NCBI RefSeq assembly: GCF_001194135.2
Contig: NC_068981.1
Coordinates: forward strand, 135,206,611 to 135,270,610
Direction: 5' to 3'
DNA: 64,000 bases
Origin: Octopus bimaculoides
Lineage: Eukaryota
Part shown: one piece after another, positions 25,687 to 36,040 of the stretch
Numbering within the stretch: the first letter of the stretch is position 1
Layout: each line of letters starts with the position of its first letter
Program-made: the position numbers and the translations under genes
Notes under the pieces: generated by a model
What the model saw: the letters and a program-made list of their open reading frames with translations, nothing else
What the model was told of the DNA's origin: nothing
The model's database searches: none

Positions 25687-26089
25687 AGGAAGCGGTCCAG
25701 CTTCCTAGGGCTAAACGGCAGTAGTGTGTTCCCTTCTTGGGATTGTCACATTAAGTTGACAATACACTACAACTTTATCGCTGCACTACTGCTTAAATCT
25801 CTCTGAGAGATTTGGAAATATTATATTTCTAATTTTGCTGATCAGTGAATAAACTTCACTATGATCATATAAGTTTGCGAGAGCTAAACAAGCTTCTTTA
25901 ACTAGCTGGCAAGCTACTTTAGGCTGATGATGAGCAAAGACTCAGAAACATGTCCCTGAATGCTGGCTAGGCTGGGTGGAGGAGCTTGTCTTCCCCTCGC
26001 AAACTTAAGGACACAGTAATTGTGTCAAGGCAGACAGGAAGCGGTCCAGCTTCCTAGGGCTAAACGGCAGTAGTGTGTTCCTTTCTTGG
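25687..26089 (+). mobile_element. Retrozyme-like element: 349-bp unit plus 54-bp terminal redundancy, containing a hammerhead ribozyme
   Basis: Direct repeats 25687-25740 and 26036-26089 (1 mismatch); no ORF; nested helices around the HHR; sits in a (TA)-rich tract between two SINEs. Confidence 0.7.
25918..25960 (+). ncRNA. Type I hammerhead ribozyme, canonical core, predicted cleavage GUC^ after 25954
   Basis: Helix I TTTAGG/CCTGAA (6 bp, one GU), CTGATGA 25924-25930, helix II TGAG-caaaga-CTCA, GAAA 25945-25948, palindromic helix III ACATGT, GTC 25952-25954. Confidence 0.85.
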
Positions 26090-26121
26090 CATTTATATAT
26101 ATATATATTATATATTGTGTA

Positions 26122-26483
26122 GGCGCAGGAGTGGCTGTGTGGTAAGTAGTTTGCGTATGAACCACATGGTTCCGGGTTCAGTCCCACTGTGTGGTACCTT
26201 GGGCAAGTGTCTTCTATTGTAGCCTCGGACCGACCAAAGCCTAGTGAGTTAATTTGGTAGGTGGAAACTGAAAGAAGCTCATTGTATATATATGTGTGTG
26301 TGTTTGTCCCCCACCCATCGCTTGACAACTGATGCTTGTGTGCTTACATCCCTGTAACATAGCAGTTCAGCAAAAGAGACCAATAGCTTACAAGAATAAG
26401 TCCTGGGGTTGATTTGTTCGACTAAAGGCAGTGCTCCAGCATGGCTGCAGTCAAATGACTGAAACAAATAAAAGAATAAAGAA
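26122..26483 (+). mobile_element. SINE family A, near full length
   Basis: ggcgcaggagtggctgtgtggtaagtag...ggttccgggttcagtcccactg...gcagtcaaatgactgaaac. Confidence 0.9.
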
Positions 26484-28716
26484 TATATATACATATATAT
26501 ATATACAGAGAGAGAGAGAGCGAGAGAGAGAGAGAGAGAGAGATCTAAGATAACTCAAAGGAGTCAGCAATGTAAATTTAGATTGTAAATGCAATGTTGT
26601 GGAAGTCATAGTGCACTGAATAGCAATCATGAGAAATTCTTAATGTATTGAAATTTGCTTAATAAACAGAGAAGAAAAACATATAATTCCTAGGGGCAAT
26701 TATTAAGAATTCTGAACAAGAAGGGAAGATGATTTTAAGAAATTAAACGCAACTCCTTGGTTGAATAAACATGTTTAGAGAGAAAGGACAATGTGTTCTT
26801 TATTTTGATGCATGTTTCAGTGTCGATTTGGCCTCATCAACATAACATTGTTTTTCTCACTTTCTCAAACAGATATAGCCAATTTGGGTGTGAGACATTT
26901 TGGCACAGCCATTCTTGCGCTGCCTGTTTGTTGTTGCTAATTAGACATTGACCTATTTGACAGCAGATGTTTTAATATTTCTCTCATTTAACGTTTTTCT
27001 TTTTCTCTCTCCTCCTTTCTCTGTCTCTCCCTGTCTCTTTCTCCCTCTGTCTCTTTCTCTCTCTTTATCTCTTTCTCTCTCTCTATCTCTTTCTCTCCAT
27101 ATGTGTATATTTTTACATGCACATGCATTTCTTTGTGTGTGTGTGTTTGCCTCCAGCATAAAAATATACTGATGCCAAAAGAGAGTGAATGTCCAGTCAC
27201 CAGTGCCAAATGATCAGTGTCGAAACAGCCACACCCAATTGACTCAGTCCAAGACAATTTAACATATAAAAGAAGACTTTAATACATTCTTGTCTAAGAG
27301 TAATTAGCATAATTAAAACTAAATGGAAATGTGAGAAAAATAATACAAAATTGACAAAGGTGCATAATTAATGCAGTTACAATAATTTATCAAAAATTTC
27401 CCTTTTGGAAACAAGGAAAACAAAATTCTGAAACCTGGCAGGAATTGTTAACAGTTCTGAATTTATACAATTTCATGTCACATGGACCATTTGGGTTATT
27501 TTCTCTTAGATGCTTTTAATTTTAATTATGGCAATTACCCTTTGCCAAGAATGAGGGCCAGAGTGAGAAGTAGATAATAGAATGACAAAAGAAGAGAATT
27601 TGAGAGATTAGATGAGAGAAAAAGATAGAGAGAGTGTATGAGTGAGTGATAGACAGCTACATGATGGTTATTGATAAGAAGAATGAATAGAAACAATGTG
27701 ACCAAGTAGAGTGATACAACAGAGACAGTCATTGAGAGAAAGAGAGTGATAAGAGAAGCAGGTAAAGAGAAGAAAGTAATACATGAAAGACAAAGAGAGT
27801 AGTATACCACCAGACATATATATATATATATATATATACATACACATATATATCAATAACACCAGCTACATTCACCAACTTAGGTTGATCAGTACATCCA
27901 CTACCAGCATCAACACACAATTCCGTCATTACCATTAGCAACACAATAGTCTTCTGACATCATCAATGTTCACCTGCCATATATCTGTGTGTATGTATGT
28001 GTGTTTGTGTGTGTGTCTCTGTGTGTGTGTATGCATACATCCATATGTACGTATTGTATGTATGCATGTAATCTTTTTTTTTTACTTGTTTTAATTATTC
28101 AACTGTGGCCATGCTGGGGCACTACCTTGAAGTATTTTAAGCAAATGAGTTGATTGCAGAGCTTATTTTCCTTTTTAAAGCCTGTTACTTATTCTGTTAG
28201 TTTATTTTGCCAAACTGCTAAGTTATGGGGACACAAACACCACAAGCAGAGGTGGAGGACAAACACACATACACCCATGTGCCAACATGCATACACACAC
28301 ACACGCGTGCGCACACACACACGAACACCTCATCACCACAGTTATTGCTTCTCTCCACCCCAACCACTCTTTCATTCTCTTCTAAATTGAGTAGTCATGT
28401 AACCTCTCTACACCAAAAAACCTTGCTTTTTGCTCTGACCCTTTGTCTCTTACTTCAACCCTCATCTCCTAGCATAAAGTCACCTCTCTCAAGGTTTGTA
28501 GTCCAGCAAGCTGCATGGTGACTTCACTAATTCTGGTGATACAAAAATGGCACCCAATACATGCTGTAAAGGAAGGACATCAAGCCATAGAAACCATGCC
28601 AAAATAGACAGTGGAGGTTGTGCGTCCAGGCAACCCTTTTCAGGGATAGCACTGCCTGCTCCATTTTGGCTGATAGTTAGCAAGGTGAGACACACATAAG
28701 AAAGAAGAAAGCAAAG

Positions 28717-28760
28717 GACCACTGATGAGGTCACAGAAGTGTGACGAAAGAACTCTGGTC
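28717..28760 (+). ncRNA. Minimal type I hammerhead ribozyme, predicted cleavage CUC^ after 28755
   Basis: Helix I GACCA/TGGTC (5 bp perfect), CTGATGA 28722-28728, extra G, helix II GTCACA-gaag-TGTGAC, GAAA, short helix III AG-aa-CT, C17. Confidence 0.75.
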
Positions 28761-28870
28761 GAAATAGGATTAATGTAATATAATGTAATATAAAGCTGAA
28801 GCAAATTAACACCAAATATACAGTGCATGTGTTTTTATTGGCTAAACTGGCAATATGACAATCCCCAAGT

Positions 28871-28902
<32 letters not shown>

Positions 28903-29305: not shown

Positions 29306-29393
29306 TTTCCCTGAAGAGATGATTACATTGTTTTACATCATTTTATTCCCTCAGGTATAATATCAATATTTTCTTCGAAACATATGTCGGAAG
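29306..29393 (+). ncRNA. Hammerhead-like motif with an expanded helix II domain, predicted GUC^ after 29388
   Basis: TTTCC-CTGAAGA(29311-29317)-59-nt insert closed only by GA/TC-GAAA-CATATGTC^GGAAG; palindromic helix III ACATATGT; 5-bp helix I. Confidence 0.5.
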
Positions 29394-30256
29394 TATAAAG
29401 ATTTGAATAACACCTGCAATTAACTCCATTTCTTAATTTATGTATGTATCTGTGCGTGTGTGTGTATGCATGTATATATATATATATNNNNNNNNNNNNN
29501 NNNNNNNNNNNNNNNNNNNNNNNNNNNNNNNNNNNNNNNNNNNNNNNNNNNNNNNNNNNNNNNNNNNNNNNNNNNNNNNNNNNNNNNNNNNNNNNNNNNN
29601 NNNNNNNNNNNNNNNNNNNNNNNNNNNNNNNNNNNNNNNNNNNNNNNNNNNNNNNNNNNNNNNNNNNNNNNNNNNNNNNNNNNNNNNNNNNNNNNNNNNN
29701 NNNNNNNNNNNNNNNNNNNNNNNNNNNNNNNNNNNNNNNNNNNNNNNNNNNNNNNNNNNNNNNNNNNNNNNNNNNNNNNNNNNNNNNNNNNNNNNNNNNN
29801 NNNNNNNNNNNNNNNNNNNNNNNNNNNNNNNNNNNNNNNNNNNNNNNNNNNNNNNNNNNNNNNNNNNNNNNNNNNNNNNNNNNNNNNNNNNNNNNNNNNN
29901 NNNNNNNNNNNNNNNNNNNNNNNNNNNNNNNNNNNNNNNNNNNNNNNNNNNNNNNNNNNNNNNNNNNNNNNNNNNNNNNNNNNNNNNNNNNNNNNNNNNN
30001 NNNNNNNNNNNNNNNNNNNNNNNNNNNNNNNNNNNNNNNNNNNNNNNNNNNNNNNNNNNNNNNNNNNNNNNNNNNNNNNNNNNNNNNNNNNNNNNNNNNN
30101 NNNNNNNNNNNNNNNNNNNNNNNNNNNNNNNNNNNNNNNNNNNNNNNNNNNNNNNNNNNNNNNNNNNNNNNNNNNNNNNNNNNNNNNNNNNNNNNNNNNN
30201 NNNNNNNNNNNNNNNNNNNNNNNNNNNNNNNNNNNNNNNNNNNNNNNNNNNNNNNG

Positions 30257-30344
<88 letters not shown>

Positions 30345-30823
30345 ACACACACATACATATATTTGTATATTTATATACTTTTAGTTATGCACGCATATAC
30401 ACGCATCTTAATCTGTTATTTTTCTCTTGTTTCAGTCAGTTTTGTGGCCATACTGGAGCACTGCCTTGAAGGGTTTAGTCGCATAAATCGATCCCATATC
30501 ATGTGCATGTTTGTAAAACAAGGGTTAGCCGAATATAACGAGGCATTGTTTTACAGATGGATTCACGTCCTGTCTCTAACCTTTACATGTTTTTTTCTTC
30601 TCCGGGTAAGGGGTCTCATATTCTACACGTCTACGAAGGGGCAAGCCCACCCGACAGTTTATTGACAGGGAATATGGCAAGCCGTCACTTGTATCTCAGC
30701 AATTTTCGGAGAAGTGCAAGTATAAACAAGCCGCAAATGCACATGTAAAATGAACACTCGTATGGGTGTACGTACGTATGTATGTATTGTATTGTACATA
30801 TTTGTGTATGTATGTGTACACAC

Positions 30824-35934: not shown

Positions 35935-36040
35935 TTAGGGGGTTAGGGTTATGGTTAGTTTTAGGGTTCAGGTTAGTTAGGGTTAGGGTTAGTTTTAGGG
36001 CTAGTTAGAGTTTGGGTTACAGTTAGTTTTAGGGTTAGGG
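35935..36040 (+). repeat. Degenerate interstitial (TTAGGG)n array
   Basis: TTAGGG units interspersed with TTAG and TTTTAGGG variants over about 105 bp. Confidence 0.8.

What the first reader, a model, noticed from the sequence alone, without database searches (positions are those of the whole stretch)
25687..26089. Retrozyme-like unit: 349-nt, almost fully base-paired, hammerhead-containing element with terminal redundancy
Seen: a 54-bp direct repeat (25687-25740 = 26036-26089, 1 mismatch) defines a 349-bp monomer with no ORF. It holds a canonical type I hammerhead (25918-25960, GUC^). Helix I extends through nested stems: 25902-25910/25962-25970, 25888-25899/25978-25989 and 25870-25881/25996-26007 (12 bp perfect). 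The rest also folds: 25718-25728/25782-25792, 25742-25748/25757-25763, hairpins at 25795-25813, about 25838-25866, 26010-26026 and AGGAAG..CTTCCT. The imperfect positions are G-U wobbles, pointing to structure at the RNA level on the + strand. Known: metazoan non-LTR retrozymes are 150-400-nt repeats with type I hammerheads, often with a palindromic helix III that cleaves as a dimer; they yield circular RNAs and are thought to be mobilised by Penelope-like RTs. Inference: this is a 1.15-mer insertion, reverse-transcribed from a circular or multimeric RNA into a TA tract. With only one HHR, this copy alone cannot release a unit-length monomer. I do not know of a cephalopod description but cannot verify novelty.
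Basis: partly seen in the sequence, partly recalled or inferred. Interest (0 to 1): 0.9.

Follow-up and report, generated by a model that had tools for sequence, protein, structure and literature searches.

The report
Hammerhead-ribozyme retroelement copy (animal retrozyme)
This is one slightly-longer-than-unit copy of a roughly thousand-copy, non-coding mobile element that carries a self-cleaving hammerhead ribozyme; the kind of element is already known in animals (non-LTR retrozymes linked to Penelope-like retrotransposons), so it is a new member, not a new kind.

Summary
A 58-nt direct repeat (25687-25744 = 26036-26093, 2 mismatches) frames a 349-nt non-coding unit lying in a (TA)n tract. 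The unit holds a type I hammerhead (25918-25960, cut after C25954). A hammerhead descriptor finds 2 hits in the window against 0.01 expected.

Public DNA reads of the same organism show a family of about 1,000-3,000 copies. The head-to-tail joint 26035|25687 is genomic in many of them. Across copies the catalytic core varies under 2%. Helix I carries two compensatory pair changes, and the helix III palindrome changes ACAUGU to ACUAGU and stays a palindrome. This points to selection on a ribozyme that works as a dimer.

Two claims are overstated. Only 65% of bases pair. The 10.1/11.1 pair is U-A here and C·A in 78% of copies. Rfam scores the motif below threshold (HH9, 25 bits against 52).

RNA reads exist at low depth, with no excess of joints and no pile-up of ends at the cut site. 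Circles and cleavage are therefore not shown.

Best reading: a dead-end 1.17-unit copy of a non-LTR retrozyme family, probably moved by Penelope-like elements. A Penelope-type minimal hammerhead lies 2.6 kb away. The kind is known, and I found no paper describing it in cephalopods.

The parts
25687..26035 (+). One 349-nt unit of the element (non-coding, GC 42.4% against 33.4% for the window)
   Evidence: Repeat spacing 349; no ORF over 26 aa; GC; DNA read depth 110-2,400 at about 0.7x genome cover
26036..26093 (+). Terminal redundancy: second copy of 25687-25744, making the insertion about 1.17 units (407 nt)
   Evidence: 58 nt, 2 mismatches
25918..25960 (+). Type I hammerhead. Helix I 25918-23/25955-60; core CUGAUGA 25924-30; helix II 25931-34/25941-44 with loop CAAAGA; GAAA 25945-48; palindrome ACAUGU 25948-53 (helix III only as a dimer); predicted cut after C25954
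   Evidence: Sequence; descriptor 2 hits against 0.01 expected; Rfam HH9 25 bits, below threshold; core under 2% variable and compensatory changes at 25923/25955, 25919/25959 and 25950/25951 across genomic copies; ACAUGU pairs between two copies in cofold
25870..26007 (+). Long imperfect helix that extends helix I (25902-10/25962-70, 25888-99/25978-89, 25870-81/25996-26007)
   Evidence: Inverted repeat I1, 37 nt, 76%; RNAfold MFE
25742..25763 (+). Hairpin with one compensatory pair across the family (25743 U to C with 25762 A to G)
   Evidence: 25743 T>C 62%; 25762 A>G 44%, or 59% when clipped reads are counted
26010..26026 (+). Hairpin GACACA/UGUGUC. The frequent variants listed in this hairpin lie in the loop (26017, 26020), and in one variant contig the stem is unchanged
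   Evidence: variant GGACACAGGAAATGTGTC
25687..25706 (+). Hairpin AGGAAGC/GCUUCCU at the head-to-tail joint
   Evidence: RNAfold; joint 26035>25687 seen in 688 and 572 DNA reads
25831..25912 (+). Subfamily-specific middle segment. Only about a tenth of family reads match it at 80% or better
   Evidence: DNA depth 110-200 here against 2,000-2,400 in the rest. Loose ends at 25832 and 25913 continue into related but different sequence
25674..25686 (.). Left side of the (TA)n target, which is the tail of the upstream SINE copy
   Evidence: Sequence; SINE pair 25269-25687 / 26116-26505
26094..26115 (.). Right side of the (TA)n target. No target-site duplication can be read in a TA repeat
   Evidence: Sequence

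Best explanation
The locus is a dead-end, 1.17-unit genomic copy of a non-autonomous retroelement family of the animal 'non-LTR retrozyme' kind.

Proposed life cycle:
1. Copies with two or more units are transcribed on the + strand.
2. Two hammerheads pair through their ACAUGU palindromes to build a shared helix III, and each cuts after GUC (here C25954).
3. [quoted passage not shown]
4. A host RtcB-type ligase closes it into a circle.
5. The reverse transcriptase and GIY-YIG endonuclease of a Penelope-like element copy the circle or multimer for more than one turn and insert it into (TA)n.
6. This leaves copies with terminal redundancy like this one.

Shown here: the anatomy, the copy number, the genomic head-to-tail joint, the TA target, low-level RNA, and selection on the ribozyme.

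Inferred from the published family: cleavage, circularisation, and mobilisation by Penelope-like enzymes.

This copy has a single ribozyme, so it cannot release a unit by itself.
For: Motif beyond chance: 2 hits against 0.01 expected. The architecture equals the published canonical metazoan type I hammerhead: helix I 6 bp, helix II 4 positions, a CAAANA-like loop 2, and a 2-bp helix III with a palindromic 2-nt loop (PMC4209133). Rfam HH9 aligns helices I and II.

Family: DNA depth 600-2,400 where unique flanks give about 1, so roughly 1,000-3,000 copies. The joint 26035>25687 is in 688 and 572 DNA reads.

Selection on the ribozyme:
- Core positions C3-A9, G12-A14, A15.1, U16.1 and C17 all vary under 2%.
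- 12 positions vary at about 5% or more, and all lie outside the 13 core positions of the 50-nt stretch (P 0.015).
- Pair 25923/25955 changes G-C to A-U in 32%/37% of reads.
- Pair 25919/25959 changes U-A to C-G in 34%/37%.
- 25950/25951 changes AU to UA in 7.6%/7.7%, which keeps the palindrome.

Other support:
- Cofold pairs the palindrome between two copies.
- Fold z -7 on the + strand, stronger than the - strand.
- GC 42%, unit length 349 and no ORF all fit the published definition (PMC7229834).
- The (TA)n target and partial tandem fit Penelope-like insertion (PMC8557442).
- A Penelope-type minimal hammerhead repeat lies 2.6 kb away in thousands of genomic copies.
- RNA contigs of two other coded organisms hold the ribozyme region and the joint.
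Against: - No evidence of circles or cleavage. RNA joint reads per depth (0.22-0.34) do not exceed the DNA value (0.41), and no read ends pile up at 25954/55.
- RNA depth is low relative to copy number (RNA/DNA about 0.08) and the libraries are unstranded. Published retrozymes are highly expressed.
- The usually conserved G10.1-C11.1 pair is absent: U-A here, C·A in 78% of copies, 11.1 is U in 7%. The axolotl HHR_Amex2 has a U·U mismatch at the same place and still cleaves.
- Rfam score is below threshold.
- Linkage of the co-varying positions within single reads could not be read, only matched frequencies.
- Array lengths and the autonomous partner could not be seen without the genome.
- No reverse transcriptase in the window.
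Confidence: 0.72

Rival explanations
1. It is a remnant of the pseudo-LTR of an autonomous Penelope-like element (a partial tandem left after loss of the ORF), and not an independently propagating retrozyme.
For: The partial tandem and (TA)n target are typical of Penelope-like insertions. The conserved block 25913-26035|25687-25832 is shared with subfamilies that carry a different middle. Its 48-nt part 25785-25832 is joined to a different, longer sequence in RNA contigs of three organisms, including a 739-nt contig. Pseudo-LTRs and retrozymes are related in Xenopus.
Against: No ORF and no RT or endonuclease signal anywhere in the window. The middle of this copy is only about 80 nt, and that exact middle recurs at depth 110-200, roughly 150-300 copies, so the short unit itself has multiplied. 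The ribozyme is the canonical type with loop 2 CAAAGA, not the minimal Penelope type with a long helix II and a bulge after A9.
Confidence: 0.15
2. It is a stray fragment of a hammerhead-bearing satellite DNA that spreads by DNA-level events (unequal exchange, segmental copying) with no RNA intermediate.
For: The head-to-tail joint is common in genomic DNA. Newt 'satellite 2' was first described in this way.
Against: This copy is an isolated 1.17-mer that interrupts the TA tail of a SINE. No single family-wide terminus dominates the loose ends, which suggests variable end points as expected from copying a circle or multimer. The ribozyme helices show compensatory changes, which needs selection at the RNA level.
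Confidence: 0.08
3. The hammerhead is a chance match inside a hairpin-rich repeat and has no ribozyme role.
For: Rfam below threshold. Non-standard 10.1/11.1. No cleavage signal in RNA reads.
Against: 0.01 hits expected per window. The core is invariant and three compensatory changes occur across thousands of copies. The ribozyme region is the best conserved part in two other organisms, with 0-9 differences in 44-63 nt.
Confidence: 0.02

Closest known systems
Metazoan non-LTR retrozymes (Cervera and de la Pena, NAR 2020, PMC7229834: coral, mussel Rtz about 353 nt, axolotl Rtz 331/353)
   Same: Non-coding unit of 150-450 nt (349 here), GC under 45%, type I hammerhead, head-to-tail copies, strongly self-paired predicted RNA, co-existence with Penelope-like elements that carry minimal hammerheads.
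   Different: Published invertebrate retrozyme hammerheads mostly have a more stable helix III and cleave as single motifs. This one has the amphibian-style minimal palindromic helix III, so it should depend on a dimer. High expression and circles are not shown here. No cephalopod case was found in the held literature, and the host itself is not confirmed by any tool.
Axolotl/newt hammerheads HHR_Amex1 and HHR_Amex2 (satellite 2 type)
   Same: Helix III of 1-2 bp with a palindromic loop, active as a dimer. Amex2 has a U·U mismatch at the base of helix II, comparable with C·A or U-A at 10.1/11.1 here. Unit length 330-350 nt.
   Different: No sequence relationship was tested or expected. Copy number is about 10^3 here against 10^5 in the axolotl.
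Minimal hammerheads in pseudo-LTRs of Penelope-like elements (Cervera and de la Pena 2014, PMC4209133; Lunse et al. 2017, known to me but not held)
   Same: Palindromic 15.2-16.2 region, action as dimers, partial-tandem genomic structure, TA-repeat targets.
   Different: Those have helix II of 6-8 bp, helix I of 4-5 bp, an unpaired base after A9 and G10.1-C11.1. The focal motif has a 4-position helix II, a 6-bp helix I and a loop 2 like the Schistosoma/HH9 type. The motif at 28716-28760 fits the minimal type.
Rfam Hammerhead_HH9 (RF02275), clan CL00010
   Same: Helix I with internal loop, the CUGAUGA and GAAA cores, and a 4-bp helix II with a CAAAAA-like loop all align.
   Different: Helix III is deleted and 10.1/11.1 differ. 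25 bits against a gathering score of 52, so it is not a member by Rfam's own cut-off.

Membership tests
Non-LTR retrozyme | Contains a type I hammerhead with an intact catalytic core | tested here: met
   Core CUGAUGA, GAAA and GUC in type I order with helices I and II. The core varies under 2% across the family.
Non-LTR retrozyme | Short non-coding unit (150-450 bp) of low GC | tested here: met
   349 nt, longest internal ORF 26 aa, GC 42.4%.
Non-LTR retrozyme | Occurs as head-to-tail repeats, from dimers to multimers | tested here: inconclusive
   This locus is only 1.17 units. The joint 26035>25687 is in 688/572 DNA reads, roughly 1,300 joints in the genome (my estimate from the counts at about 0.7x cover), but array length cannot be read from 150-nt reads. 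No long-read runs were offered.
Non-LTR retrozyme | Transcribed, self-cleaved and accumulated as circular RNA | tested here: inconclusive
   RNA reads cover the family at depth about 40-200. There is no excess of joints over DNA and no end pile-up at the cut site. Libraries are unstranded and of unknown selection.
Non-LTR retrozyme | Self-cleavage in vitro (single or dimeric) | not testable with these tools
   Only a cofold prediction that the palindromes pair between two copies.
Non-LTR retrozyme | Highly self-paired predicted RNA | tested here: met
   z -7.0 to -7.2; 65% of bases paired.
Non-LTR retrozyme | Co-occurs with autonomous Penelope-like elements | tested here: inconclusive
   A Penelope-type minimal hammerhead repeat is present in thousands of copies. 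No RT/endonuclease ORF was seen in the window.
Penelope-like element pseudo-LTR | Flanks an RT plus GIY-YIG ORF | tested here: not met
   No Pfam hit among the ten ORFs scanned, out of 31 of 120 aa or more in the window; the other long ORFs overlap on both strands as in simple repeats and were not scanned. Nothing coding lies next to the unit.
Penelope-like element pseudo-LTR | Minimal hammerhead: long helix II, unpaired base after A9, G10.1-C11.1 | tested here: not met
   Helix II has 4 positions with U-A or C·A at its base, and a canonical loop 2.
Penelope-like element pseudo-LTR | Partial tandem structure and microsatellite (TA)n target | tested here: met
   58-nt terminal redundancy, with TA tracts on both sides (compare).
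Rfam hammerhead clan CL00010 | Score at or above a family's gathering threshold | tested here: not met
   Best is HH9 at 25 bits against 52. No hit in whole-window scans.

The most novel reading that the evidence does not exclude
It would be an invertebrate family whose hammerhead depends on a dimer, like the amphibian ones, and tolerates a C·A mismatch at 10.1/11.1. It would still be active, would produce circular RNAs not yet looked for in total-RNA data, and would be paired with the Penelope families reported as recently active in Octopus vulgaris (PMC13282606).
Probability: 0.25. Interest if true: 0.55.

Novelty: new member of a known kind. Interest (0 to 1): 0.4.

Why it matters
It adds a lineage to the known spread of ribozyme-bearing circular-RNA retroelements. 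It also gives natural covariation data for a dimer-dependent hammerhead, including a compensated change inside the helix III palindrome. The window places a canonical retrozyme hammerhead and a Penelope-type minimal hammerhead within 3 kb. That makes this genome a convenient place to test the proposed parasite-partner relation between retrozymes and Penelope-like elements. It does not change the current picture of what these elements are.

Tried and rejected
- Rfam at gathering score on the window, and at E<=10 on 600 nt: no hammerhead. Only a 71-nt scan gave a sub-threshold HH9 match.
- BLAST of the unit against the window: no second copy.
- Pfam on ten long ORFs of the window: nothing. Six-frame reading of 26550-28900: only low-complexity stretches.
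- Recovering family copies through spurious ORFs. A 48-aa open frame across the joint found no protein. An exact look-up of a 290-aa ORF, meant to identify the source record, found nothing.
- Exact-pattern scans for the ribozyme in bacterial/archaeal genomes and in viral contigs: 0 hits.
- A degenerate pattern in metagenomes gave 12 contigs with a similar but unrelated hammerhead. They have a U bulge and GGCC/GGCC helix II, and no ORF of 200 aa or more. They are not relatives of this unit.
- Laying contigs of organisms B and C on a 71-nt stretch gave no variant table, so that call was wasted.
- No Nanopore or PacBio runs were offered.
- Covariation in stem 25717-27/25783-93 could not be judged. 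Its variants do not pair up simply, and indels split the subfamilies.
- The host organism could not be identified. Run names are coded. My impression that the flanking SINE looks octopus-like is memory only.

Full report
**What is there**

The window holds a 58-nt direct repeat, 25687-25744 = 26036-26093, 97% identical, spaced 349 nt apart (alignment). The insertion is therefore about 407 nt, or 1.17 units. The left flank ends in ...AAAATATATATA. That is the tail of a tRNA-derived SINE copy (25269-25687), which has a second copy at 26116-26505. The right flank continues as TATATATATATATATTATATATT. The unit therefore interrupts a (TA)n tract, and no target-site duplication can be read. No ORF longer than 26 aa lies inside it. 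Its GC content is 42.4% against 33.4% for the window.

**The hammerhead**

Read from the sequence, the parts run in type I order:
- helix I strand UUUAGG (25918-23)
- CUGAUGA (25924-30)
- helix II UGAG/CUCA with loop CAAAGA (25931-44)
- GAAA (25945-48)
- C-AU-G and U-C (to 25954)
- helix I strand CCUGAA (25955-60)

Helix III is only A-U and C-G around a 2-nt loop, which cannot close. ACAUGU (25948-53) is a palindrome, however, and a cofold of two copies pairs it between molecules.

These proportions match the 'canonical' metazoan type I hammerhead as defined by Cervera and de la Pena (PMC4209133): helix I 6 bp, helix II 4 positions, a 6-nt loop 2 like CAAAUA, and a helix III of 1-2 bp with a palindromic loop. 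That type is active as a dimer. A descriptor I wrote finds two motifs in the window. It finds 0.01 per 64 kb in shuffles.

Rfam gives nothing at its thresholds. On 71 nt it aligns Hammerhead_HH9 at 25 bits against a gathering score of 52. Helices I and II are matched and helix III is deleted. By Rfam's rule this is not a member, and the lost bits are explained by the missing helix III.

**Fold**

- The + strand folds at -128.1 kcal/mol (z -7.2) and the - strand at -114.7 (z -5.9).
- As a circle starting at the cut site, the + strand gives -123.9 (z -7.0). 65% of bases are paired and 10 of 114 pairs are G-U.
- 'Almost fully base-paired' is too strong. The fold is branched.

**The family**

Only one copy is in the window. 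Raw DNA reads of the same coded organism give a depth of about 1 on unique flanks. On the unit they give 600-2,400, and on the SINEs 40,000-100,000. From those depths I estimate roughly 1,000-3,000 copies.

I then laid reads on the monomer alone. The well-conserved part is 25903-26035 joined to 25687-25830. The middle, 25831-25902, is matched by only 110-200 reads, so it marks a subfamily. The head-to-tail joint 26035>25687 is in 688 and 572 DNA reads, where the depth near the ends is 1,100-2,200. The joint is therefore genomic in a large share of copies. No single loose end dominates as a common terminus, so the end points of insertions vary.

**Selection on the ribozyme**

With a 2% reporting limit on 76 nt (pooled):
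- Every core position (C3-A9, G12-A14, A15.1, U16.1, C17) varies in under 2% of some 2,000 reads.
- Pair 25923/25955 changes from G-C to A-U, with frequencies 0.32 and 0.37.
- Pair 25919/25959 changes from U-A to C-G, with frequencies 0.34 and 0.37. In RNA reads all four sites are near 0.30.
- 25950 A>T and 25951 T>A both occur at 0.076-0.077. This turns ACAUGU into ACUAGU, which is still a palindrome and is what a helix III formed between two molecules needs.
- 12 positions of the 50-nt stretch vary at about 5% or more, and all avoid the 13 core positions (P 0.015).

I could not read linkage within single reads. The argument rests on matched frequencies in four libraries.

Outside the ribozyme, hairpin 25742-63 shows 25743 U>C (0.62) with 25762 A>G (0.44, or 0.59 when clipped reads are counted). 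In hairpin 26010-26 the frequent variants listed lie in the loop. Stem 25717-27/25783-93 gave no clear answer.

**An atypical point**

Position 10.1 (25931) is C in 78% of copies. The T of this copy sits where the family has a CpG, so it looks like a CpG-to-TpG change. Position 11.1 (25944) is A, and U in 7%. The usual G10.1-C11.1 pair is therefore absent. This copy happens to have U-A.

The axolotl HHR_Amex2 has a U·U mismatch at the base of helix II and still cleaves, better as a dimer (PMC7229834). Activity here must be tested.

**RNA**

Two raw RNA libraries cover the family at depth 40-200, equally on both mate orientations. Joint reads per depth are 0.22-0.34 in RNA against 0.41 in DNA. 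No read ends pile up at 25954/55. Transcription is thus seen, but circles and cleavage are not.

RNA contigs of two other coded organisms hold 25913-26035|25687-25780, including the joint. The ribozyme region has 0-9 differences in 44-63 nt.

The block 25785-25832 is joined in RNA of all three organisms to a different conserved sequence, AACATTTTTCTGATGTTCTTCGGCG.... This may be a longer relative. I could not fetch it.

**Comparison with what is known**

Non-LTR retrozymes are non-coding, low-GC, 150-450-nt head-to-tail repeats with type I hammerheads. [quoted passage not shown]

A 2026 preprint argues from vertebrate genomes that they derive from Penelope pseudo-LTRs. Penelope-like elements form partial tandems, and their Naiad clade is reported to prefer (TA)n (PMC8557442).

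The present unit meets the structural criteria. The expression and array criteria are open. It does not meet the definition of a coding Penelope element or of its minimal hammerhead.

A motif of exactly that minimal type lies at 28716-28760: 5-bp helix I, an unpaired G after A9, a 6-bp helix II with G10.1-C11.1, and a minimal helix III. It sits in a repeat with thousands of copies that ends in (TA)n.

**Novelty**

I found no paper in the held library that describes hammerheads or retrozymes in cephalopods. A detailed 2026 repeat annotation of Octopus vulgaris lists active Penelope families but no ribozyme elements. No tool confirmed the host of this window.

The element is a new member of a known kind.

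Noticed in passing
window 28716-28760 (+), inside repeat 28667-28878: A second hammerhead, of the Penelope-like 'minimal' type: gacca-CUGAUGA-g-GUCACA gaag UGUGAC-GAAA-g aa c-UC^ugguc. It lies in a repeat of about 210 bp that ends in (TA)n. DNA depth is 1,700-4,500 at about 0.7x cover, so there are thousands of copies. RNA depth is 650-1,100, about five times more RNA per DNA copy than the retrozyme family. Its helix III hexamer AGAACU is not a perfect palindrome. Rfam gives no hit.
   Followed up: partly
reads laid on window 25762, 25777, 25957; also before 26120: A palindromic 30-mer, AGGTTCGTCCATCGATCGATGGACGAACCT, follows retrozyme-family copies that break off at several different points. 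A near-identical sequence precedes SINE copies in about 18,000 reads. It is probably an abundant palindromic (MITE-like) repeat that has landed in many places.
   Followed up: no
window 25785-25832: In RNA of three coded organisms this 48-nt block continues into a different conserved sequence (AACATTTTTCTGATGTTCTTCGGCGTTTCT...; one contig of 739 nt). RNA per DNA is higher here than in the rest of the unit. It could be a longer relative, possibly the autonomous parent, or a host transcript that has taken up a fragment.
   Followed up: partly
window 25269-25687 and 26116-26505: Two copies, about 80% alike, of a tRNA-derived SINE with a TA-rich tail. Read depth is 40,000-100,000 at about 0.7x cover, so it is one of the most abundant repeats of this genome. 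The retrozyme sits in the tail of the first copy.
   Followed up: partly
window 35942-36039: A short interstitial array of TTAGGG-like telomere repeats (periods 18 and 34, degenerate).
   Followed up: no
L001-L012 (JGI metagenome contigs): Twelve contigs carry hammerheads CUGAUGA-U-GGCC-AAAUA-GGCC-GAAACAUGUC, with the same ACAUGU palindrome but unrelated flanks. L007 and L012 have two copies in opposite orientation 290 nt apart. There is no ORF of 200 aa or more, so this is probably host (eukaryotic) DNA in the metagenomes.
   Followed up: partly
window 29338-30665 and 44674-45800: Clusters of long ORFs that overlap on both strands, as is typical of simple-sequence or low-complexity DNA and not of genes. 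I did not scan these two clusters against Pfam; the ten other long ORFs I scanned gave no domain.
   Followed up: no
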